The notes: generated by a model from the letters alone, not told the origin. Counted from the first letter of the stretch, positions 21,763-58,307 are shown. The stretch: DNA of 64,000 bases from Octopus sinensis (GCF_006345805.1 NC_042999.1:55676001-55740000), one strand, 5' to 3'. Program-made: numbers and translations.

Positions 21763-21889
21763 CTGCAATGGAATACAAAAACATTATTCAACATCTAAAT
21801 GTCTTTTAGTGTCCAGTATTTTAGGCACAAACACACATATACACACAAATACATACAGACACAAAGCATGGGTTATGGTATCACTGAAA

Positions 21890-22125
21890 AGGTGGCGAGC
21901 TGGCAGAAACGTTAGCACGCCGGGCGAAATGCGTAGCCGTATTTCGTCTGCCGTTACATTCTGAGTTCAAATTCCGCCGAGGTCAACTTTGCCTTTCATC
22001 CTTTCAGGGTCGATTAAATAAGTACCAGTTACGCACTGGGGTCGATATAATCGACTTAATCTGTTTGTCTGTCCTTGTTTGTCCTCTCCATGTTTAGCCC
22101 CTTGTGGGTAGTAAAGAAATAGGTA
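21890..22125 (+). mobile_element. SINE family c (example; ~18 copies)
   Basis: ggcgagctggcagaaacgttagc...gttcaaattccgccgaggtc(a/g)actttgcctttcatccttt. Copies at ~1356, 3220, 5828, 6983, 12943, 21003, 39960, 45922, 48945, 52445 and 57452. The central part resembles the Meta-type SINE domain as I recall it (unverified). Confidence 0.8.
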
Positions 22126-22963
22126 TCACTGAAAAGCACTGGTGCTGGTGCTACATAAACAGCATTGATGTTGGTACCATGTAAAAAGTACTGGTGATGG
22201 TGCCATGTAAAAAGCACCCAATACACTCTGTAAAGTGATTAACATTAGGAAGGGCATCCATCATCATCATCGTTGTCTTTTAACATCTGCTTTCCATTCT
22301 GGCATGGGTTGAAAGATTTGACTTAGGAGTGACAAGCCAGAAGGCTGCACCAGCCTCCAATCTGATCTGGCAAAGTTTCCACAGCTGGATGCTCTTCCTA
22401 ACACCAACCACTCTGAGAGTGTAGTGAGCACTTTTTATGTGCCACTGGCACGAGGGCCAGTCAAGCAGCACTGGCAACGACCACGCTTGAATGGTGCTTT
22501 TTAAGTGCCACCGGCATGGGACCCAGTCAGGTGGCACTGGTAATGACCATGTTTGAATGATGCTTTTTACATGCCACTGGCACAAGAGCCAGTCAGGTGG
22601 CACTGGCCATGACCACATTTGAATGGTGCTTTTTACATCCCACTGGCATGCGAGCCAGTCAGGTGGTACTGGCAATGACCATGTTTGAATGGTGCTTTTT
22701 ACAACATCCCACTGGTACGGGAGCCAGTCAGGTGGTACTGGCAACAACCACACTCAAAAGGTGATCCAGCTGTAGTAACCATGCCAACAAAGACAATGGA
22801 ATCTGGTGCACCACCTGACCTCTTGGCAAACTGTCCAACATAGAAAACAGACATTAAATAATGATGATGATGATGATATATGAGAGGAGGCTCATGTATA
22901 TGTGTGTGTGAGATGGGGGGGATGCTGGCAAATGGTTAAGTAAATATATCATGACTCATTTAC

Positions 22964-25155: not shown

Positions 25156-27422
25156 TACACTGAGTGTAGATAAGAGTATACAAAGGGTGTGTGCAAGCAG
25201 GTGTATATACAGTGTATGAAAGAATGTATAAAGACTGATGTCATGTGATTGAGGACCAGACTATCAGATGTTGTTATACATCACTTGTCACAATGCACTT
25301 TGCATTGTTTTAGCTTTCAAAGGATGCCACCACCCCAACTGGGTGGAGTGAGCAGGACAACATCAAGGTGCCACTCGGTCTGGCAATCAAACCCATGATT
25401 TAGCAATTGTGAGTGCAACATCCTAAACACTAGGTCATACACCTTCAACTATATATATATGGCAATGACCAAGACCTTTGGCATCATGTCGTGCATGAGA
25501 AGAAGACCCATCAAGCCAGGAAAAATTGTAGTTGTGAGAGAATCCGGTGTCATGCAAATGGCACCCATGCTGGTAGCATGTAAAAGCACCCATTACACTC
25601 TTGGAGTGGTTAGTGTTAGGAAGAGTATCCAGCCTTTCAAGTGTTGGGCCTCACGGAGGCAATGACCAAGACCTTTGGCATTATGTCATACTTAAGAAAA
25701 AGACCCATCAAACCAAACAAAATTGCAGTTTGGGCAGATACCAGTGTCACACAAATGGCATGTAAAAGCACCCATTACACTCTCGGAGTCATCATCATCA
25801 TCGTTTGACGTCCGTTTTCCATGCTAGCATGGGTTGGACGGTTCAACTGGGGTCTGGGAAGCCAGAAGGCTGCACCAGGCCCAGTCTGATCTGGCAGTGT
25901 TTCTACAGCTGGATGCCCTTCCTAACGCCAACCACTCCATGAATGTAGTGGGTGCTTTTTATGTGTCACCTGTACAGATGCCAGACGGGGCTGAGTGTTA
26001 GGAAGAGCATCCAGCCTTTCCAGTGTTGGGCCTCATGGAGGCAATGGCCAAGACCTTTGGCATTATGTCATGTTTGAGAAGACCCATCAAACCAAACAAA
26101 ATTGCAGTTTGGGCAGATACTGGTGTCACACAAATGGCATGTAAAAGCACCCATTACACACTCGGAGTGGTTGGTGTTAGGAAGGGCATTGAGCTGTAGA
26201 AACATTGCCAGACCAGATTGAACCCTGGTGCAGCCTTCCGGCTTGCCAGCCCTGGTCAAACCATCCAACCCATGCCAGCATGGACAACGGACATTAAATG
26301 ATGATAAATATGATGATGATGATGATGTTGACGGTGGTGACAATGATGATGAAAATGATGATGATGATGGTGGTAGTGGTAGTGGTTAGGATGACGATGA
26401 TGATGTTGAAGATGATGATGATGATGATGCTATATATAACAGAGAGTGTATATACTCATCATCATCATCATCCTCATCACTATTTTAAAGTTAACTTATC
26501 TGGGTTAGAAAGGATTAGAAGAAACTTAAGGAAGTTGGATGAAGGGGTCAGGGAAACATCCCAATCCCCTGTTTCACATAAGTCTTTAAGGCACAACTCA
26601 GTGCTTCCTTGTCAGATTGCAAACAACAACATTTAGACAGAACAAATAAAAGATTTAAAATAAATGATGGGCCTGTGCCGGTGGCACGTAAAAAGCACCC
26701 ACTACACTCACGGAGTGGTTGGTGTTAGGAAGGGCATCCAGCTGTAGAAACATTGCCAGATCAGATTGGAGCCTGGTGCAGCCTCCTGGCTTCCAGACCC
26801 CAGTTGAACCGTCCAACCCATGCTAGCATGGAAAGCGGACATTAAACGATGATGATGATGATGATGGGGTCATCATCACCATTTAATGTCCATTTTCCAT
26901 GCTGGCATGGGTTGGATGGTTTGACAGGAGCTGTCAAAGCCAGGCGGCTGCACCAGGTGCCAATGGTCTGTTTCAGCAAAGTTTCTACAGCTGGATCATC
27001 ACCATACATGCAATGGACTGGGGCCAGCAAGTTGGGGAGCTCCACCAGGTGTTCCAGTCTGATTTAGCTTGGTTTCACCAACTGGATGCCCTTCCTCACA
27101 CCAACCACATCACAGTGTGTACTTGGTGCTTTTTACATGGCACCATCACCTGTGCTTTTTATGTGGCCTAAAAACCCTTCAAGGCAGTGCCCCAGAAAGG
27201 TCACACTCCAATGAAAGAAAACCTTCAAATAAAAAGCAGTATCTTTGCAAAAATTCCATGGTGACTGTGATCATCTTTTGATTAGGACCCCCACATTATG
27301 ACACATGGTAACCCAAGTTCAAATCCTGGTCACTGCAAGTCTCTTCAACTTTTAATGGCAGTGCCCCAGCATGGCTACAGCCTCTGGTGGAAAAACCTGT
27401 AATAGAAACATTCCACAATAAA

Positions 27423-27792
27423 CATTATTTACATTTGACAGATATTTGTCCTCATCTTGTTTGTTGTTAACACAATGTTTCAGCTGATATACTCTCCAGC
27501 CTTCATCAGGTGTCTTAAGGAAATTTCGAACCTGCATTCTCATTCCTAAGGTATTTTTCAATTATTATTATTAATATTATTATTATTTTCGATGTTATTA
27601 ATAATAACATCAAAAAATACCTTAGGAATAAGAACCCAGGTCCGAAATTTCCCCATGACACCTGATGAAGGCTGGAGGGTATATCAGCCGAAACGTTGTG
27701 TTAACAGCAAACAAGATGAGGATAAATATCTGTCAAAATGTAAATAATGCAAATAATGTAAATAATTCCTCACCTCTTAAATATAGAACTGT
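27423..27792. mobile_element. Penelope-like inverted-repeat element carrying two hammerhead motifs (family A)
   Basis: Inverted ~150-bp arms; 13-bp TSD attccacaataaa (27410-22 / 27793-805). Confidence 0.8.
27657..27702 (+). ncRNA. Minimal type-I hammerhead ribozyme motif, family A (apparently intact)
   Basis: Helix I gacac/gtgtt; core CUGAUGA 27662-68; extra A; helix II ggctg/cagcc; GAAA 27690-93; ACGU palindrome; predicted cleavage GUU after 27697. Confidence 0.75.
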
Positions 27793-27823
27793 ATTCCACA
27801 ATAAAGCTATGATGTTTACTCAC

Positions 27824-36079: not shown

Positions 36080-36171
36080 TTCTGTCAAACCATAATGACT
36101 TGAAGATATCAATTCTTCAGCTACTTTCAGACAAGCTTCAACACGTTCTGGGTCTTCAGTTCCAATCAGAC
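36080..36171 (-). CDS. TELO2: TELO2 coding exon 12 (LIGTEDPERVEACLKVAEELISSSHYGLTE)
   Basis: Acceptor ttttaaag|GT, donor GAA|gtaagt; 92 nt; phase 1 to 0; matches human [21 protein letters not shown]. Confidence 0.9.
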
Positions 36172-38019
36172 CTTTAAAACAACAGACAAAAATAATAACC
36201 CAAGATCAACAACAGAAGAGAGTTCCAGGAAGCTAGCTGGTTGCAATAGCAACACCATTCTGCACATGTCCCCTCCACACATGCTCACACACACGCACAT
36301 CGGCAACATTTGTCTATTTCTTGAAAATGGAGTCATAACCCTGAAATATTGAATACAAGGTAAGTCAACATTAATTCACATATTAAAAGCACCATCCAAG
36401 TGTGAACGTTGCCAGCCCCACAGATTGGTTCCTGTGCCGGTGGCATGTAAAAAGCGCTATTCAAGAGTGATCGTTGCCAGAATCGCCTTACTGGCACATG
36501 TGCTGGTGGCACATGAAAAACAACACTTGAGCGTGGTCGTTGCCAGAACTGCCTTGACTGGCCCTTGTGCCAGTGGCACATAAAAGCACCCACTACAATC
36601 TCGGAATGGTTGGCGTTAGGAAGGGCATCCAGCTGTAGAAACTCTGCCAGATCAGATTGGAGCCTGGTGCAGCCTTCTGGCTCACCAGTCCTCAGTCATA
36701 CCGTCCAACCCATGCCAGCATGGAAAGCGGACGCTAAACAACGATGATGATGTTTTCTTGTGATTTACCTTGCACTATTTTGGCCTTACTCATGATCCTT
36801 TATACAAGCAATTTTTTTTTTGTTGAAGGACAGGGAAAAATGTGAAATGAGTTAAGAGGGATGCTTCGACAAACAGTTATGAAATGTCTTTAATCAAAGG
36901 TCTGTTTAATGAGGACTAAACTGGGATCAAACAACAACACTAATGTCCCTGGAAATGTTCGAATCCCCAAACCAGAGATTGGCAAACTTCTTATGTCACT
37001 AATCCCTTCAATGTGGAGTCATTGATAACTTACCAACCTCACTAAACCCATTGTGTCGTCATCATCATCATCATTTAATGTCCACTTTCCCTGTTGGCAT
37101 GGGTTGGACGGTTTGAGTGAAAACTGGTAAGCCAAGGAGCTGTACCGGGTTCCAATCCAACTTGGTAAGATTTCTATGGCTGGGTGCCCTTCCTAATGCC
37201 AACCATTCTTGCAAGAGTGTAGTGGGTGCTTTTTACATGTCACTGGTATCAGCCACAATCACGATCTCACTTGGTTTGACAGGTCTATACAACCACGGTT
37301 TTCTTATATAAAAATTTAAAAGTATAATTAATAAAAATAATTTATTGATTTAAAATCATGCATCAGCATGGCCACAGCTCTGAGCTGAAACTAGAGAGAA
37401 AAAAAAAAAAATAATCCCTTTGTACTTTTGTGTCCTTATTACTTTTTAATAAGAAATAGTTAAAGAAATTTAATGCAAATACTTAATGAAATTGATAAAG
37501 GACAATAAAAATTTAATCATTATTTTGGTTTCAAATTTTGGCACAAAGCCAGCAATTTCGGGGATAGTCAATTATGTCAATCCCAGTGTTCAACTGGCAT
37601 TTATTTACCGACCCCTAAAGGATAAAAGGCAACACTGACCTCAACAAAACTCAGAGCATAACGTCAGAAGAAACGTTAAGCATTTTGTCCTGTGCAGTAG
37701 CCATTTTGCCAACTCATTGCCTTATTTATCATCATCATCATCATCATCCAGTGTTTTAAATCCAGGTCTTGTCTCCATTAACAGGGGTAGCCAGATCTAC
37801 CTCAATGCTATAGCACCCGAAGTAGGCAGGTGCAACCCACTCCAACCTTTGGGTTGGCTGGTGCCCATTCTCCCTTGCTATCATGAGGCTTTTTTGGAGC
37901 TGGATTTTCTATAGGGCTCATGCCCTTGCTTAGCCCCAGCCTCAGTTTCTAGACATGAGTGGTCCCAAGACCAAAGCCTCTAACATGATTTTTAAGAAAT
38001 GTGGTGGAAAACTAGCTCA

Positions 38020-38370
38020 GGAAGGCAGGAACGCTACACCCTGAAGCAGAGATGTTACTCCTTGGGGCAGAGATGCTACTCCCTGAGGCAGGGACGCTAC
38101 TCCCTGAGGCAAAGATGCTACTCCGAGGCAGGACGCTACTCCCTGAGGCAGGGATGCTACTCCCTGAGGCAGGACACTACTACCTGAGGCAGGGACACTA
38201 CTCCGAGGCAGGGACACTACACTCTGAGGGAGAGATGCTACTCCCTGAGGCAGGGACACTACTCCCTGAGGCAGGGATGCTACTCCAAGCATGGACGCTA
38301 CTACTCTCTGAGGCAGAGATGCTACTCCCTGAGGCAGGGACACTACTCCGAAACAGGGATGTTACTCTCT
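38020..38370. repeat. GC-rich minisatellite, ~19-21-bp unit (tactccctgaggcaggga(c/t)(a/g)c)
   Basis: About 17 variant units, directly visible. Confidence 0.92.
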
Positions 38371-39061
38371 GAGTAGTCATGTTATACAGATATACTCAGA
38401 GTATTCACAGTGAAATTAGTATTTGGTTCATATTGCATTATATTTGGCAGGAGCTTAGTGAGTTTTGGCCTTTAAGTAACCAATCTTTTATCTTTTACCT
38501 GTTTCAGTCATTTGACTGTGGCCATGCTGGAGCATCACCTTTAGTCAAACAAATTGACCCCAGGACTTATTCTTTGTAAGCCTAGTACATCAGTCTCTTT
38601 TGCCGAACCACTAAGTTACAGAGACGTAAACACACCAACATCAGTTGTCAAATAATGGTGGCGGGGACAAACACAGACACACAGATACACACACACACAT
38701 ATAAATACTACAGGTTTTTTCAGTTTCCGTCTACCAAATCCACTCACAAGGCTTTGGTGGGCCCGAGGCTATAGTAGAAGACACTTGCCCAAGGTGCCAC
38801 GCAGTGGGACTGAACCCAGAACCATGTGGTTCATAAGCAAGCTACTTACCACACAGCTACACCTGCACCTATAAATGTTCAAAATGTTTTCAGGTGTTTT
38901 TCATGGATAGCCACATAGACACCCAGCCCCCACAGGTGTCACTATTGACCACTTTGCTGATACCTGCTCTAAACCAAATGTTAAAATTCCCACACTTTAA
39001 TCTGTATAAGACATGATGAATAAGGGAGAGGAAATACCTTTTGCGAATAATTGCTTACCTT

Positions 39062-39358
39062 TTACATTGTTTACCTTCGGCTGATATACCCTCCAGCCTT
39101 CTTCAGGTGTCTCATTCCTAAAGTATTTTTCGATGTTATTAATAATAACATCGAAAAATACTTTAATAATAATATTAATAATAATGACATTGAAAAATAC
39201 CTTAGGAATGAGAACCCAGGTTCAAAATTTCTCCAAGACACCTGATGAAGGCTGGAGGGTATATCAGCCGAAACGTGTTAACAACAAACAAGATGAGGAC
39301 AAATATCCGTCAAATGTAAATAATGTAGATAATTCCTCATCTCAAATATAGAACTGTA
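39062..39358. mobile_element. Second family-A Penelope-like inverted element; TSD includes the exon 11 donor
   Basis: Same arms and the same ...aaatatagaactgt terminus as 27423-27792; 14-bp TSD taattgcttacctt (39048-61 / 39359-72). Confidence 0.82.
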
Positions 39359-39369
39359 TAATTGCTTAC

Positions 39370-39458
39370 CTTCCATACAATCCCTTAAGTATTTTGGTGT
39401 TTTCACTTTCTGTTCTTGCTTATCATGTGACATGTCGAAGGGTTCAAAGTCATCATCA
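39370..39458 (-). CDS. TELO2: TELO2 coding exon 11 (DDDFEPFDMSHD...PKYLRDCME)
   Basis: Acceptor ttgttggcag|T, donor GAAG|gtaagc; 89 nt; phase 2 to 1; matches human DDEFVPYDMSGD...PAYVRDCVE. Confidence 0.93.
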
Positions 39459-40675
39459 CTGCCAACAATAATTTACAGAGAGAAATACAACAACAGTGAA
39501 ATGTATTGAACAAAGAATATGCAAATTAACATGTGGCTAACAGCTGACACTATACAATACAGGTCATATATAGTCTAGATTAGGGTGGAGAACCCCTTAA
39601 TCACATTCAATTGTCCACAACAAAGTCCACCTTCTGTGATAGGAATCACAATGCAGTTTCAATGTAAAGAGAATGGTGACAATACATATTTAAAAATATC
39701 GTTATTTGTAGCGGAGTGAGGGTGTATAACCTAGTGATTAGGGTGCTGCACTAACGACTGCGAGATCGTGGTTTCAATTCCTAGATTGGGTGTTGCATTG
39801 TGTTCTTGAGCAAAACACTTCATCTCACCTTGCTCTGTGATCTCTTTGCCACCTGATGCGTGGCACACTGTGCCCCTGTTCAGGCAATGTCGATTTGATG
39901 GAGAGAGATAGTGAGCTGACGTACAACACACACATTTGATCATTATAAACAAATCATTTGTATTTCTTTACTGCCCACAAGGGGCTAAACACAGAGGGGA
40001 CAAACAAGGACAGACAAAGGGATTTAGTCGATTACATCGACCCCAGTGGGAAACTGGTACTTTATTTATCGACCCCGAAAGGATGAAAGGCAAAGTTGAC
40101 CTCGGCGGAATTTGAACTCAGAACATAACGACAGACGAAATACGGCTACGCATTTCGCCCGGCGTGCTAACGATTCTGCCAGCTCACCACCTTTTGTGAT
40201 GATTGTTCATTAAAAACCAAACAGATAATACGTTGTCTTCAATGAAAAGTTCCAAACTCCTAAATACATCCTAAACTGTATTTTCATTCTTACAGAAGCC
40301 TACACCTGTCACCGCATCAAGGTAGAAATGACAGCACAGTTTAGATGTTATGGTAGAATATTGTCTAACAAAATATCAAATGTAAATAAACAGCTTGAAT
40401 ATTTTAATATAAAAGACAATACAGTTTATATCAAATAAAGTTAATTAAATTTAAGCAATGTATTCATGAATGGTTAACGAGTTGGATGTAATGCTGAAGA
40501 TGGAGCAAGGACCCCTGTAATACGCAAATACACCCATTACTATTTTCCCATCTCTGCACATTGTTTACACAGATGTATTTGTATACAGAGTGTTATAACT
40601 TTCAGGGCTGGCTCTAAACTCTTTACAAAAAATCTGTAGAGATACACTTAAAGATGAAAACAACACATTGCTAAT

Positions 40676-41214: not shown

Positions 41215-41328
41215 CTATCAAGATCTGATTCTTGATTCTCCGATATTTTTTCCTGATCCTTTTTCTTTGTCACATTTTCAGAAGGTTCTGTGATATTTTC
41301 AGATACTTCACTAATTTTCTCAGCCACC
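41215..41328 (-). CDS. TELO2: TELO2 coding exon 10 (VAEKISEVSEN...ENQESDLD; acidic linker)
   Basis: Not in the ORF track. Acceptor aatttag|G, donor GATAG|gtctgt; 114 nt; phase 2 to 2; ends in SDLD(S), the first half of the conserved SDLDSDD motif. Confidence 0.85.
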
Positions 41329-42854: not shown

Positions 42855-43159
42855 CTGTGAGAGAAAAGAGAAGAGAGACAGACAGAAATTAATATATATA
42901 TATGTGGTTAGAATCAGTGAAATACAGAAACAAAGAGAGGTACGGTAACATGGAGTTATGGTAATACATAGAAACAGAACAACAGAGATGTGGTATGGCT
43001 GTCAAGATTTGATATAATATACAAATACACACACACACACACGTATTGGTATAAATGGATTATACCATTGAGAGATATGTGATATTGACAGGGATACGGG
43101 GAATATTTTGTGGAGAGACAAAAGTTCAGTTCTATATTTAAGAGATGAGAAATTATGTA

Positions 43160-43810
43160 CATTATTTACATTTGACAGTTATTTGTCCTCATCTTGTTTG
43201 TTGTTAATACGTTTCGGCTGATATACCCTCCAGCCTTCATCAGGTGCCTTGGGGAAATTTCGAACCTGGGTTCTCATTCCTAAAGTATTTTTCGATGTAA
43301 TTATTATTATTATTCAGGTCACTACTTAGAATCAAACTGGGAATCTTGGGGTTAGTAGCACGCACTCTTAACCACTATCGAGTGAATTTTAGGGCTTATA
43401 AATCTAATATTTTCCCCAGGCTACTAACCCCAAGATTCTGAGTTTGATTCCAGGCAGTGACCTGAATAATAATAATAATGATAATTATTATTATTTCTTT
43501 ATTGCCCACAGGGGGCTAAACATAAAGGGGACAAACAAGGACAGGCAAAGGGATTAAGTCAATTACATTAACCCCAGTGCATAACTGGTACTTATTTCTT
43601 CAACCCTGAAAGGATGAAAGGCAAAGTCAACCTCGGCGGAATTTGAACTCAGAACACAACGGCAAACAAAATACCGCTAAGCACTTCGCCTGGCGTGTTA
43701 ATGCATCAAAAAATACCTTAGGAATGAGAACCCAGGTTCGAAATTTCCCCAAGACACCTGATGAAGACTGGAGGGTATATCAGCCAAAATGTTGTGTTAA
43801 TAACAAACAA
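43160..43810. mobile_element. Third family-A inverted element, interrupted by a SINE (43495-43706) and RTE tails
   Basis: Hammerhead-like copies at 43203-43248 (-) and ~43753-43800 (+; G12 mutated). Confidence 0.7.
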
Positions 43811-44714
43811 AATCATCATCATCATCATCATCATCATTTAGCGTCCGTTTTCCATGCTAGCATGGGTTGGACGGTTCAACTGGGGTCTGGGGAGCCCGAA
43901 GGCTGCACCAGGCCAGTCAGATGAGGACAAATATTCGTCCTCATTCGAGACAAAAATGAGGACAAATATTCGTCAACCATCCAAACGTGGTCGTTGCCAG
44001 CGCCGCCCCCACTGGCCTCCGTGCCGGAGGCACGTAAAAAGCACCATCCGGTTGTGGCCGTTGCCAGCCTCGTCTGGCCCCCGTGCTGGTGGCACGTAAA
44101 AAGCACTATCTGATCGTGGCCGTTTGCCAGCCTCATCTGGCACCTGTGCAGGTGGCACGTAAAAAGCACCCACTACACTCACGGAGTGGTTGGCGTTAAG
44201 AAGGGCATCCAGCTGTAGAAACACTACCAGATCAGACTGGGCCTGGCGCAGCCTACTGGCTCCCCAGACCCCAGTTGAACCGTCCAACCCATGCTAGCAT
44301 GGAAAACGGACGTTAAACGATGATGATGATGAATGGAGACAAAAATTGTTGCCATGGAGCCTAGTCAAGCAACACTATCAACTACACCAGTTATAACTCA
44401 CACACACACACTAATGCCAGTACAAATACACACACACTGTTGTCAATACACATACACACACAGAGGAACTGAACCATTCATCCACTGACAACAAATGTCC
44501 TTCCCAGTCAGACAGAAGTTACATTTTATTTTTCAGGCAGATATAATCTCTCATCTAAGTTCAAAGTTTGAATTAATGACTGTAACAGCAGTTGAACTCA
44601 TGACCCAATGGTCAGCAGTCGTGTACCTTAACCTACTTCAATCTAGAACAACCAACACCAAACACCGAAAACATTCTGATACTTCAAGGTGCAACAGGAC
44701 AACAAAGAACTTAC

Positions 44715-51123: not shown

Positions 51124-53507
51124 TTAAACAATGATGTTTCTGCTGAAATGCACTGCCTTTGTGTCAATTAATTTTGAAAATAATGAAGAATTTTGGAAAA
51201 TAAGTGCAAAGAGCACCATATGTGCGTGATCATTGACAGAGCGGCTAACCGGCTTCTGTGCCAGTGGTACTTAAAGGGCACCATTCGAGCGTGATCGTTA
51301 CCAGCATCGCCTTACTGGCACTTGTGCCCGTGCTAGTAGGGCGCCAAGAGCCACCATCCGAGTGTGATCGTTGCCAGAGCAGCCAACTTGCTTCCATGCT
51401 AGTGGCACGTAAAAGGGCACCATTTGAGCGTGATCGTTACCAACGTCGCCTTACTGGCACCTGTAAAAGGATTTGAGCGAGGTCGTTGCCAGTGCAACCT
51501 GACTGGCCCCCGTGCCGGTGGCACGTAAAAAGCACCCACTACACTCTTGGAGTGGTTGGCGTTAGGAAGGGCATCCAGCTGTAGAAACTCTGCCAAATCA
51601 AGATGGGAGCCTGGTGCAGCCATCTGGTTCAAGAGCCCTCAGTCAAAATCGTCCAACCCATGCTAGCATAGAAAGCGTACATTAAACGATGATGATGATG
51701 ATGAAGTTTGTCAATATTATGCTAGTGTTTGGAACATAAATTAACATGAAATTTCAATGGATGGTTTTAAATGGCATTAAAATACAGAATTAGCATTGTT
51801 GCCAGTTGCTTGAATTAAGCTGTTCATCAACATCATCATCATCGTCAACATTTAACATCCGTTGTCCATGCTGGCATGGGTTGGATGGTTTGATCAGGGC
51901 TGGCAAGCTGGAAGGCTGCACCAGACTCCTTTCTGATTTGGTATGGCTTTCTACAGCTGGATGCCCTTCCTAACACCAACCACTCTGAGAGTGTAATGGG
52001 TGCTTTTACATGCCACCAGCACAGGTGCCATTTGTGTGACCCCAATATCTGCCAAGACTGTGATTTTACTTGGCTTGATGGGTTTTCTTCTCAAGCATGA
52101 AATAATGCCAAAGGTCTCAGTCATTGCCTCCGTGAGGCCCAACACTTGAAAGGAGCTTTTCACATGCCACCAGCATCAACCATTTTGTCTCCATGAGGCT
52201 CAACGCTCGAAAGGTGCTTATGTGCCACCAGCACGGGTGCCAGTTATGTGACACCAGCATCAGCCACGACTATGACTTCACTTGGCTTGGAGGGTCTTCT
52301 CGGGCACAGCATATCACCAAAGCTCTTGGTCAATAAAGATATGTTTTGTGGCCACATGAAGAAGAACAGAAGCAACTCGTGAACATTTAAATGAATATTT
52401 ATTGCAGGGCCTAAAGGCATCTGGTTATTTATAATGAACAACATTAAGGTGACAAGCTGGCAGAAACGTTAGCACACCAGGCGAAATGCGTAGCCGTATT
52501 TCATCTGCCATTACGTTCTGAGTTCAAATTCCGCCGAGGTCGACTGTGCCTTTCATCCTTTCAGGGTCGATAAATACAGTACCAGTTTCACAGTGGGGTC
52601 GATGTAATCGACTTATTCCCTTTGTCTGTCCTTGTTTGTCCCCTCTATGTTTAGCCCCCTGTGGGCAGTAAAGAAATATATAATGAACAACATTAATAAC
52701 TCCCAACTAGAAGAGAGACAGACTGCTCTGAAATTACAGAAAGCTATCTATGTGACAACAAGCAGTCAGCCCAAAAATAAACAGAGTCACCTGTATAAAT
52801 CTCTATGGCAACAGAGGTCCTTGGCTGTCTGCACTCTAAGTCATGTGTCAAACAATTTTTATAGGGGACCAGAAGCCAAATTCTAGAATGTTGGAGAAAA
52901 CCTGATCATGCCACAGCTTCACACTGATTGGTTGACTAATAGACCAATCATGTGAAACCATGGTGGTTTGCTCATGGTGTTTAACTGATTATCTAGTGGT
53001 TGGGGTTTTGAATCGCTGCTACTAATATCATAACACCAGGAATGTCTGAAGTATGGAAAAGGTTAACAGTTCTGCCATTCCATACAAGGCTTAGTGGCTA
53101 GGGTGTTGAACCCATGGAACTCATGACCCAAAGATTGTAGTTTCAATTCCTGGACCAGGCAATGCATTGTATTTTTGAGCAAAACACTACATTTCACAAA
53201 GCTCCAGTCCACTCAGCTGGCAAAAATGATTAAACCTAAAATGGACTGGCATCCCATCCAGGGGGAAATATATATTGCCATGGAAACCATCCCTGTGAGT
53301 CTATGTGACTCGATAAGGATTTTTTTTTTATCTAATTCACCACCCTGGGTGCTTTTCTATTGACCCTGAAAGGATAAAAGCAAATCTGACCTAGGCAAGA
53401 TTTGAACTCAGAGCTTAGAAAACCAAAACAAATACAGCAATTTGTTTTGTCTTATGACCTGCGACTAATCTACACAAACAACATTTAATAACCAAGTTAA
53501 TACATAC

Positions 53508-57287: not shown

Positions 57288-58307
57288 CTGCAAAAGAAGG
57301 TAAAAGGAAAGAATTGGTAATATAGAATATAAACAATGGGGACGAATTCTTCCAAAGATAACAAAATTCCAAGATCTACAAGACATATTTTACTTAATCA
57401 AAAACATACAGATAATATCCTCATCCACATCATTTAGCATCCATTTACCTATTTCTTTATTACCCACAAGGGGCTAAACACAGAGGGGACAAACAAGGAC
57501 AGACATAGGTATTAAGTCGATTACATCGATCCCAGTGCATAACTGGTACTTAATTTATCAACCCCGAAAGGATGAAAGGCAAAGTCGACCTTGGCGGAAT
57601 TTGAACTCACAACGTAACGCAGACGAAATACCGCTAAGCATTTCGCCCGGCGTGCTAACGTTTCTGCCAGCACACCGCCTTAGCATCCATTTACCATGCT
57701 GGCAGGGGTTGGATGGTTTGACAGGAACTGGCAAGGCCAGGGGCCACACCAGGTTCCATAGTCTGTTTTGGCAAGGTTTCTACAGCTGGATGCACTTCCT
57801 AATGCCAACCACTTTACAGAATGTACCGGGTGCTTCTTATGTGACACTGACACCAGTGCTTTTTTATGTGGCACCATTAAGTGTTTTTATATGGTACCGG
57901 CACTGGTACTTTTCATGTGGCACTAACACCGACAGGATGACAAAGTATTTTGCAAGATAAGAACCCCCAATTTCCATTTGGTTTATACCAAGGGGTCAAC
58001 AAATTTCCTTATATCATTGACTCCCTTCCTGGAATCATTCACAACTTATTGATCTCCATAGTGTAAATTTTTAAGATAAAATCAAAATCTATGATTAATA
58101 AAAAAAAAAATCTTGATTTCAAAATAATAATTGCTTCTGTCCTTTGTTTCATTACCATTTCATCATCATCATCGTTTAACATCTGTTTTCCATGCTGGCA
58201 TGGGTTGGACGATTTGACTGAGGTCTGGAGAGCCAGCAGCTGCACCAGGCTCCAATCTGATCTGGCAATGTTCCTACAGCTGGATGCCCTTCCTAATGCC
58301 AACCACT

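What the first reader, a model, noticed from the sequence alone, without database searches (positions are those of the whole stretch)
39048..39372. Retroelement TSD duplicated the TELO2 exon 11 5' splice site
Seen: the family-A inverted element (39062-39358) is flanked by the 14-bp direct repeat taattgcttacctt, which on the gene strand reads AAG|GTAAGCAATTA. One copy is the real exon 11 donor (exon ends 39370). The other recreates the same donor sequence 311 nt downstream (exon would end 39059). Inference: the insertion landed at the exon/intron boundary and created a competing 5' splice site. Using it would add 311 nt (a frameshift) containing hammerhead-like sequence, giving a probable NMD isoform right after the SDLDSDD phospho-motif.
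Basis: partly seen in the sequence, partly recalled or inferred. Interest (0 to 1): 0.7.

Follow-up and report, generated by a model that had tools for sequence, protein, structure and literature searches.

The report
Repeat insertion duplicated a TELO2 splice donor
A 296-bp hairpin-shaped mobile repeat landed 12 bases into a TELO2 intron in an octopus and copied the exon's splice-donor signal, leaving a second identical signal 311 bases downstream. That second signal is probably folded away and rarely used, so this looks like an ordinary insertion in an unusual spot.

Summary
The exact direct repeat is 15 bp, not 14: ATAATTGCTTACCTT at 39047-39061 and 39358-39372. It brackets a 296-bp foldback repeat at 39062-39357.

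On the gene (minus) strand the repeat reads AAG|GTAAGCAATTAT. The copy at 39358-39372 is the working donor of a TELO2 exon (39458..39370). Splicing 39370 to 36171 gives a peptide that aligns without a gap to human TELO2.

The target-site-duplication reading is well supported from inside the window:
- The right boundary is the family terminus ...ATATAGAACTGT.
- A second family copy (27423-27792) has the same terminus and its own 13-bp flanking repeat.
- Three unrelated SINEs in the window carry 15-18-bp flanking repeats.

No empty site could be obtained, so this is not proven.

Use of the distal donor was not testable. It would add 311 nt with an in-frame TAA after 90 nt. Folding predicts that the distal copy sits inside the hairpin.

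"Hammerhead-like" is not supported by Rfam.

- A third, imperfect donor-like site (AAG|GTAAAC) lies in a 14-nt junction filler.
- The flank beyond the left repeat (39001-39046) is 61% identical, in register, to the missing outer arm. This is unexplained.

Verdict: an ordinary insertion in an unusual position.

The parts
39358..39372 (-). Exon-proximal copy of the 15-bp direct repeat. It contains the working exon 11 donor, AAG|GTAAGCAATTAT; the exon ends at 39370.
   Evidence: Splicing 39370 to 36171 gives a gapless alignment to human TELO2.
39047..39061 (-). Distal copy of the 15-bp direct repeat. It is an identical donor sequence, and an exon using it would end at 39059.
   Evidence: Predicted to be mostly base-paired, mean P(unpaired) 0.21-0.44.
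39062..39357 (+). Inserted 296-bp foldback repeat (family A). It consists of a truncated left arm, an A/T-rich centre and a full-length right arm ending ...ATATAGAACTGT.
   Evidence: As RNA with its flanks (39040-39385) it folds at -139.9 kcal/mol, z = -14.5.
39062..39075 (+). 14-nt junction filler, TTACATTGTTTACC. Together with the following TTC it forms an imperfect third copy of the repeat. On the gene strand this reads AAG|GTAAAC, and an exon using it would end at 39075.
   Evidence: Read. It has 8-nt patches that match the element's own arm (TTTACATT) and the repeat plus the next base (TTACCTTC). It is unique in the window.
39076..39151 (+). Left arm. It is an inverted copy of the inner part of the right arm, 14-15 of 15 identical per bin, with a 25-nt internal deletion.
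39172..39357 (+). Full-length right arm. It is 92.5% identical to the copy at 43124-43314 and contains CTGATGA...GAAAC at 39242-39274.
39001..39046 (+). Intron flank beyond the left repeat. It is 28/46 identical, ungapped and in register, to the missing outer part of the arm. In the RNA it extends the hairpin stem.
   Evidence: P = 1.7e-4 at any offset, and 0 of 29,206 random 46-mers reach this at near-register offsets.
39370..39458 (-).
39278..39280 (-). In-frame TAA, reached 90 nt past the canonical donor if that donor is not used.
36080..36171 (-).
41215..41328 (-). It supplies the first part of the SDLDSDD motif.
27410..27805 (+). Comparison copy of family A (27423-27792) with its own 13-bp flanking repeat ATTCCACAATAAA at 27410-27422 and 27793-27805. 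It has the same ...ATATAGAACTGT terminus and a left arm truncated at a different point.

Best explanation
A short non-coding foldback repeat (family A) inserted 12 nt into the TELO2 intron that follows the exon encoding DDDFEPFDMS...YLRDCME. The insertion was of the staggered-cut kind. It duplicated 15 bp of target: the last 3 nt of the exon plus the first 12 nt of the intron. The pre-mRNA therefore carries two identical donors, AAG|GUAAGC, 311 nt apart, and a third imperfect one (AAG|GUAAAC) in the junction filler.

The exon-proximal copy is the donor that makes TELO2. The two extra sites lie at the base of a very stable hairpin formed by the element and by the element-like flank, so they are most likely used rarely, if at all. 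When used, they would give a transcript with a stop 90 nt into the extension. That stop lies 219 nt upstream of the new junction, so the transcript would be a candidate for nonsense-mediated decay. The encoded protein would lack most of the Telomere_reg-2 domain.

Shown: the repeat, the element, the exon and its frame, and the family terminus. Inferred: that the repeat arose at insertion, that the insertion went through RNA, and that the distal sites are mostly silent.
For: - Exact 15-bp repeat. No such pairs occur in shuffles.
- The right-hand repeat starts immediately after ...ATATAGAACTGT. The same terminus ends copy 27423-27792, which has a different 13-bp flanking repeat.
- The flanking repeats are therefore copy-specific and variable in length (13 and 15 bp). 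Three unrelated SINEs in the window behave the same way, with repeats of 15, 16 and 18 bp.
- In both family copies one arm is truncated at a different point while the other end is constant, as expected for 5' truncation.
- TELO2 identity and the 39370/36171 junction are confirmed by a gapless alignment to human TELO2 7f4u_A residues 479-545, E = 1.8e-13, and by Pfam PF10193 at 29.7 bits against a cut-off of 23.6.
- There is an in-frame TAA at 39280-39278.
- Folding gives mean P(unpaired) of 0.63-0.84 for the canonical donor, 0.21-0.44 for the distal duplicate and 0.17 for the third site, in three sequence contexts. The hairpin MFE is -139.9 kcal/mol with z = -14.5.
- Precedent: the canine merle SINE sits at an intron/exon boundary with a 15-bp target-site duplication that holds the splice acceptor (PMC7349775).
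Against: - No empty site, allelic or orthologous, could be examined.
- The left boundary is not a family terminus. It has a 14-nt filler that resembles the repeat itself.
- The flank left of the left repeat is significantly similar, in register, to the missing outer arm. A simple insertion into unrelated DNA does not predict this.
- The constant end has no A-tail or microsatellite, and no pol III boxes or tRNA-like part were found. An RNA intermediate is therefore not demonstrated.
- The A/T-rich centre of copy 27423-27792 is inverted relative to the one here (88.8% against 81.8% identity in the two orientations). This complicates a single-orientation 5'-truncation model.
- The claim that the distal sites are silent rests only on thermodynamic folding. 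In classical cis-competition assays (my recollection, not checked here), when two strong donors are both occupied the one nearer the acceptor tends to win.
Confidence: 0.72

Rival explanations
1. One reading: the distal duplicate (39059) is a genuinely competing donor, used at an appreciable level. Exon 11 would be extended by 311 nt, producing an unproductive, decay-targeted TELO2 isoform that lowers or regulates TELO2 output.
For: The two donors are identical from -3 to +12, so their intrinsic U1 pairing is equal. The extension carries a stop 219 nt upstream of the new junction. From general knowledge, duplicated strong donors compete and the intron-proximal one is often favoured.
Against: The distal site and the third site are predicted to be mostly base-paired. 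The extended exon would be 400 nt with a roughly 100-bp stem inside it. TELO2 is an essential gene in the organisms where it has been studied, so a strongly competing site should be selected against. No expression data were available.
Confidence: 0.2
2. The strong extra donor defines an intronic pseudo-exon instead of extending exon 11. A cryptic acceptor inside the element (for example ...CCCUCCAG| or ...UACUUUAG| on the gene strand) would pair with AAG|GUAAAC or with the distal AAG|GUAAGC, giving a small poison exon.
For: Candidate AG sites preceded by pyrimidine-rich tracts can be read directly from the minus strand of 39062-39357. Family-A sequence can be exonised in Octopus: the N-terminus of the predicted O. 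bimaculoides dystrobrevin beta isoform X1 is family-A arm sequence.
Against: These sites lie inside the hairpin stem. No transcript evidence is available.
Confidence: 0.08
3. The 15-mer pair is not a simple target-site duplication. The left copy would be part of an older, degenerate family-A-like arm (39001-39075) that already lay next to the donor. The young material (39076-39357) would have arrived by homology-guided joining or ectopic conversion, with the 15-mer identity produced by that repair.
For: The region 39001-39075 is about 60% identical, in register, to the outer arm, with a sharp step to 14-15 of 15 at 39076. The left 15-mer itself aligns to arm positions 52-68 at 12 of 15. The filler is a patchwork of short templated pieces.
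Against: A 15/15 identity that begins exactly at the family terminus on the right is what a staggered cut gives. Conversion between sequences that are about 70% similar is not expected to give it. The other family copy has a clean 13-bp duplication and no flank similarity. The element-like similarity does not continue into the exon in the reconstructed empty site.
Confidence: 0.12
4. The element is a DNA transposon of the MITE or foldback kind, and the repeat is its fixed-length target-site duplication.
For: It has a long inverted-repeat architecture. Rfam models for long-hairpin microRNAs give weak hits, well below each family's gathering score.
Against: In each flanked copy one arm is truncated at a different point, so the two termini are not matched inverted repeats. 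The flanking repeats differ in length (13 and 15 bp) and match the 15-18 bp seen for SINEs in the same window.
Confidence: 0.05

Closest known systems
Canine merle allele: SINE insertion at the PMEL intron 10/exon 11 boundary (PMC7349775)
   Same: A short non-autonomous repeat inserted at an exon/intron boundary. Its 15-bp target-site duplication contains the original splice site, with consequences for splice-site choice.
   Different: Merle involves the acceptor side and a tRNA-derived SINE with a poly(A) tail, whose length drives use of a cryptic acceptor. Here the donor is duplicated, the element is a tail-less foldback, and no effect on splicing has been shown.
Non-LTR/SINE insertions made by target-primed reverse transcription
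   Same: Variable-length 13-18-bp flanking duplications. One constant end and one end truncated at variable points. Filler or microhomology at the variable junction.
   Different: There is no A-rich or microsatellite tail at the constant end and no recognisable pol III promoter. The element is an inverted dimer with an A/T-rich centre.
Penelope-like elements and animal non-LTR retrozymes (PMC8557442, PMC7229834, bioRxiv 10.64898/2026.07.22.740005)
   Same: PLE insertions often carry an inverted 5'-truncated copy next to the full unit, giving inverted-repeat structures. They also show extra tails at one end and a bias for microsatellites. The CUGAUGA and GAAA boxes are reminiscent of the hammerheads found in their pseudo-LTRs.
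   Different: No hammerhead is detectable. There is no tandem arrangement and no reverse transcriptase nearby. The link is by architecture only.
Duplicated 5' splice sites in cis-competition assays, and donors masked by RNA structure
   Same: Two identical donors compete for one acceptor, and a hairpin is predicted to bury one of them.
   Different: Those are engineered constructs with measured outcomes. Here the outcome is only predicted.

Membership tests
Target-site duplication of a retroposon-type insertion | Exact or near-exact direct repeat immediately flanking the inserted sequence | tested here: met
   15/15 identical at 39047-39061 and 39358-39372. Shuffles give no such pairs.
Target-site duplication of a retroposon-type insertion | The repeat abuts the family's own terminus | tested here: met
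   The right repeat follows ...ATATAGAACTGT. The same terminus is seen at 27792, and within 1 nt at 43126. The left end is a truncation point plus a 14-nt filler, not a terminus.
Target-site duplication of a retroposon-type insertion | Other copies carry different flanking repeats of similar, variable length | tested here: met
   Copy 27423-27792 has the 13-bp repeat ATTCCACAATAAA. SINEs in the window have 15-, 16- and 18-bp repeats.
Target-site duplication of a retroposon-type insertion | Empty site with a single copy of the repeat in an allele or orthologue | not testable with these tools
   No cephalopod DNA was reachable. There were 0 hits in the metagenome, viral and genome collections. 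The look-ups failed or returned no DNA.
SINE (pol III-transcribed, LINE-mobilised) | tRNA-, 5S- or 7SL-derived head with internal promoter, and a 3' tail (A-rich or microsatellite) at the constant end | tested here: not met
   ARAGORN finds nothing in 38600-39900. The constant end is ...GAACTGT with no tail. The A/T-rich repeats are in the centre of the foldback.
Hammerhead ribozyme / retrozyme | Match to a hammerhead covariance model | tested here: not met
   No hammerhead family at E up to 10 in 38900-39500 or 27600-27800, and none at gathering score in the whole window.
Hammerhead ribozyme / retrozyme | Three-helix junction with helix III and a cleavage triplet next to the CUGANGA and GAAA boxes | tested here: not met
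   The boxes flank helix II only. GACAC/GUGUU closes directly with no helix III. The fold z-scores are -0.01 and -0.52.
Hammerhead ribozyme / retrozyme | Head-to-tail tandem copies | tested here: not met
   The copies are inverted dimers, not tandems.
Penelope-like element derivative | Inverted 5'-truncated copy adjacent to a full unit | tested here: met
   Seen in the copies at 39062-39357 and 27423-27792. The feature is described in PMC8557442.
Penelope-like element derivative | Sequence relationship to a PLE pseudo-LTR or to an RT/GIY-YIG-encoding partner | not tested
   No autonomous partner sharing the terminus is present in the window. No genome-wide search was possible.
MITE / foldback DNA transposon | Matched terminal inverted repeats and a fixed-length duplication | tested here: not met
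   One arm is truncated at a different position in each flanked copy, and the duplications are 13 and 15 bp.
Alternative 5' splice site coupled to nonsense-mediated decay | Competent donor sequence | tested here: met
   Identical to the working donor from -3 to +12.
Alternative 5' splice site coupled to nonsense-mediated decay | Premature stop more than about 50 nt upstream of a downstream exon junction | tested here: met
   The TAA at 39280-39278 is 219 nt upstream of 39059.
Alternative 5' splice site coupled to nonsense-mediated decay | Observed use in transcripts, with stabilisation when decay is blocked | not testable with these tools
   No RNA-seq was available. Protein searches found no TELO2 entries.

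The most novel reading that the evidence does not exclude
The insertion's variable junction was set by annealing to an old, degenerate family-related fragment that already lay at the start of the intron. This would explain the in-register flank similarity. The resulting extended hairpin is what hides the two extra donor-like sites, and that is why an insertion 12 nt from the donor of an essential gene was tolerated. In an animal with heavy A-to-I editing, unwinding or editing of that stem could make use of the distal donor conditional, which would give a tunable unproductive TELO2 isoform.
Probability: 0.15. Interest if true: 0.55.

Novelty: new member of a known kind. Interest (0 to 1): 0.3.

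Why it matters
If the distal donor is used at all, this locus is a natural two-identical-donor competition in an essential gene. TELO2 is the chaperone adaptor for PIKK kinases. The only difference between the two sites is RNA-structure context, so the locus offers a clean system for asking how structure and exon definition decide 5' splice-site choice outside model organisms.

It is also a worked example of how the staggered cut of an insertion can preserve a splice site that it would otherwise destroy.

If the distal site is silent, as I expect, it is simply a tolerated intronic insertion. Its main value is then for annotation: it warns gene predictors of a decoy donor 311 nt downstream.

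Tried and rejected
- **Hammerhead or retrozyme identity.** Rejected. Rfam gave nothing at gathering score or at E up to 10. The only weak matches were to generic long-hairpin microRNA models, far below their cut-offs. Local folding was no better than shuffles, and there is no helix III.
- **tRNA-derived SINE.** ARAGORN found nothing.
- **Twin priming of the L1 kind.** Rejected as the sole mechanism. The two arms are copies of the same segment rather than adjacent segments, and the asymmetric centre is shared between copies, in opposite orientation.
- **MITE.** Rejected on the truncated arms and the variable duplication length.
- **External copies and an empty site.** A 26-mer from the family core gave 0 hits in metagenome, viral and prokaryotic genome contigs.
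- **TELO2 in the protein database.** The exon 10-12 peptide found nothing, and the exon-11 read-through ORF is not on record.
- **Family-A ORF search.** It found two Octopus bimaculoides proteins. One has too long a gene range to return DNA and the other is not on record.
- **Is the left flank a repeat?** It is not repeated elsewhere in the window.
- **Does copy 27423-27792 share the odd flank similarity?** It does not.
- **Does the element-like similarity continue into the exon in the reconstructed empty site?** It does not.

Full report
**Observation**

The expected count is 0.06, and no shuffle reached two. The repeat is in fact 15 bp, ATAATTGCTTACCTT, at 39047-39061 and 39358-39372. Block shuffles of the window give no exact 15-mer pairs at 100-1000 bp spacing.

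The 296 bp between the copies (39062-39357) form an inverted repeat. Its arms are 39076-39112 / 39236-39272 (97% complementary) and 39110-39151 / 39172-39213 (86%).

**The gene**

On the minus strand the exon runs 39458..39370 (89 nt). Its acceptor is ttggcag|TGATGATGAC and its donor is GGAAG|GTAAGCAATTAT.

I joined it to the upstream exon, which ends ...ESDLD(S) at 41215, and to the downstream exon, which starts at 36171. The resulting peptide is ...ESDLDSDDDFEPFDMSHDKQEQKVKTPKYLRDCMEGLIGTEDPERVEACLK...

This peptide aligns without a gap across both junctions to human TELO2 (7f4u_A, residues 479-545, E = 1.8e-13). It also starts the Pfam Telomere_reg-2 domain (29.7 bits against a cut-off of 23.6). 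I could not verify the exon numbers.

**Is the repeat a target-site duplication?**

Evidence from inside the window says yes.

- The right-hand copy begins immediately after ...AAATATAGAACTGT. The same 14-mer ends a second family copy at 27792. It recurs with one mismatch at the outer end of a third copy at 43126.
- The second copy (27423-27792) is flanked by its own, different direct repeat, ATTCCACAATAAA (13 bp, at 27410-27422 and 27793-27805).
- In both flanked copies one end is the constant terminus. The other arm is cut off at a different point: arm position 44 in one and about 86 in the other.
- Three unrelated SINE insertions in the window carry flanking repeats of 15, 16 and 18 bp (21877, 57434 and 52430).

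Copy-specific flanking repeats of 13-18 bp are what staggered-nick, target-primed insertion leaves. They are not what a DNA transposon with a fixed duplication leaves.

The decisive test is an empty site, and I could not run it. No cephalopod DNA is in the searchable collections. The protein routes gave no TELO2 entry and no retrievable DNA. A search with an ORF from the element did return two Octopus bimaculoides proteins.

**What the element is**

It is a non-coding foldback of two arms of about 190 bp around an A/T-rich, microsatellite-like centre. It has no A-tail at its constant end and no tRNA-like part. No autonomous partner is present in the window.

The arrangement of a full unit plus an adjacent inverted 5'-truncated copy matches what is described for Penelope-like elements (PMC8557442). 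That is a resemblance of architecture only.

The "hammerhead-like" remark does not hold up:

- No hammerhead model matches at gathering score in the whole window, or at E up to 10 in two copies.
- The CUGAUGA and GAAAC boxes flank a single 5-bp helix, with an extra A.
- The flanking GACAC/GUGUU closes the junction directly, so there is no helix III and no cleavage triplet.
- The fold is no more stable than shuffles (z = -0.01 and -0.52).
- In the TELO2 transcript the sense-oriented copy is the degenerate one (CUGAAGA...GAAG).

1. A third donor-like site. Between the left 15-mer and the well-conserved arm lie 14 nt, TTACATTGTTTACC. Together with the next TTC they form an imperfect third copy of the repeat: 14 of 16 with one gap, by my own alignment of the sequence. 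On the gene strand this reads AAG|GTAAAC, and an exon using it would end at 39075. The segment is unique in the window. It is built from 8-nt patches that match the element's own arm and the repeat plus the next base. That looks like templated filler from end joining at the variable junction. This origin is my inference.

2. An element-like flank. The intron sequence beyond the left 15-mer (39001-39046) should be unrelated to the element under a simple insertion model. Instead it is 28/46 identical, ungapped, to the missing outer part of the arm, at exactly the in-register offset. The next best offset gives 18/46.
   - Among 29,206 random 46-mers from the window, the fraction reaching 28 at any offset is 1.7e-4. 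None reaches it at near-register offsets.
   - A semi-global 85-nt comparison scores 16, against a null of 3.96 +/- 2.40 with a maximum of 15 in 4000.
   - Identity steps sharply from about 60% to 14-15 of 15 at 39076.
   - The other flanked copy shows nothing of the kind (at most 14/43).
   - The flank is not a repeat elsewhere in the window.
   - The similarity does not continue into the exon in the reconstructed empty site.

My best guess is that an old, degenerate family-related fragment already lay at the start of the intron and guided where the new copy's variable end was joined. I cannot show this, and I record it as unexplained. It does not remove the need for a duplication event to explain a 15/15 identity that starts at the family terminus.

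**Consequences for splicing**

If 39059 is used, the exon grows from 89 to 400 nt. If 39075 is used, it grows to 384 nt. In either case the reading frame runs into TAA at 39280-39278, 90 nt past the normal exon end and 219 nt before the new junction. The product would therefore lack most of the Telomere_reg-2 domain, and the transcript fits the usual rule for nonsense-mediated decay.

Whether the extra sites are used cannot be decided here. Sequence alone gives them equal strength, because they are identical from -3 to +12. Structure separates them. The element with its flanks (39040-39385) folds at -139.9 kcal/mol (z = -14.5). Across three sequence contexts the mean probabilities of being unpaired are as follows:

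| Site | Mean P(unpaired) |
|---|---|
| Canonical donor (39370) | 0.63-0.84 |
| Distal duplicate (39059) | 0.21-0.44 |
| Third site (39075) | 0.17 |

The element-like flank contributes to this, because it lengthens the stem over both extra sites. My reading is that the duplication is mostly silent. I give about 0.2 to appreciable use of the distal donor. I give less to the alternative that the extra donor defines a small pseudo-exon with a cryptic acceptor inside the element.

**Comparison and novelty**

The closest documented case I found is the canine merle allele. There a SINE sits at the PMEL intron 10/exon 11 boundary, and its 15-bp target-site duplication contains the original acceptor (PMC7349775). 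The present case is the donor-side counterpart, with a different kind of element and no demonstrated phenotype.

It is a new member of a known kind: an insertion near a splice site that the staggered cut happened to preserve. The in-register flank similarity and the structural masking are the only parts that could turn out to be more than ordinary.

Noticed in passing
window 39001-39046: The intron flank outside the left repeat is 61% identical, ungapped and in register, to the missing outer part of the element's arm (P about 1e-4). A simple insertion into unrelated DNA does not predict this.
   Followed up: partly
window 39062-39078: The 14-nt junction filler plus TTC forms a third, imperfect copy of the duplicated motif. 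On the gene strand it reads AAG|GTAAAC, a donor-like site 16 nt upstream of the distal duplicate.
   Followed up: partly
window 39340-39385 (minus strand): In the short folded fragment (39040-39385), the end of the exon (GGGAUUGUAUGG) pairs with the intron's UUAU plus the first bases of the inserted element (ACAGUUCU). This places the canonical donor in the loop of a 12-bp local stem, so the insertion may also have changed the context of the working donor. Longer contexts give a different local structure.
   Followed up: no
window 43112-44350: A third family-A copy is a composite. It has a full arm at 43124-43314, nested insertions of at least two other repeats (one itself a foldback with (CAT)n/(ATG)n ends), and the partner arm at 43699-43976. 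The whole may be flanked by a diverged repeat, GGAGAGACAAAAGTT (43112-43126) and TGGAGACAAAAATTGTT (44334-44350).
   Followed up: no
window 21877-22136, 52430-52696, 57434-57695: Three copies of one roughly 230-bp SINE family (ggtggcgagctggcagaaacgttagcac...gtaaagaaata) have clean flanking duplications of 15, 18 and 16 bp.
   Followed up: partly
P0002 (Octopus bimaculoides dystrobrevin beta isoform X1): The N-terminal residues of this predicted isoform (...GEGWRVYQPKCCVNNKQDEDKYPSK...) are a translation of the family-A arm. The family therefore appears to have been taken up as an exon, or mis-annotated as one, elsewhere in an octopus genome.
   Followed up: no
window 38017-38380: There is a minisatellite in the same TELO2 intron, with units containing GCTACTCCCTGAGGCAGGGA. 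It gives long spurious ORFs on both strands.
   Followed up: no
window 6-strand comparison of 27423-27792 and 39062-39357: The asymmetric A/T-rich centre of the foldback aligns better between these two copies in opposite orientation (88.8% against 81.8%). Relative to the centre, a different arm is therefore the truncated one in each copy. This suggests flip-flop inversion of the centre or transcription of masters from both strands.
   Followed up: no
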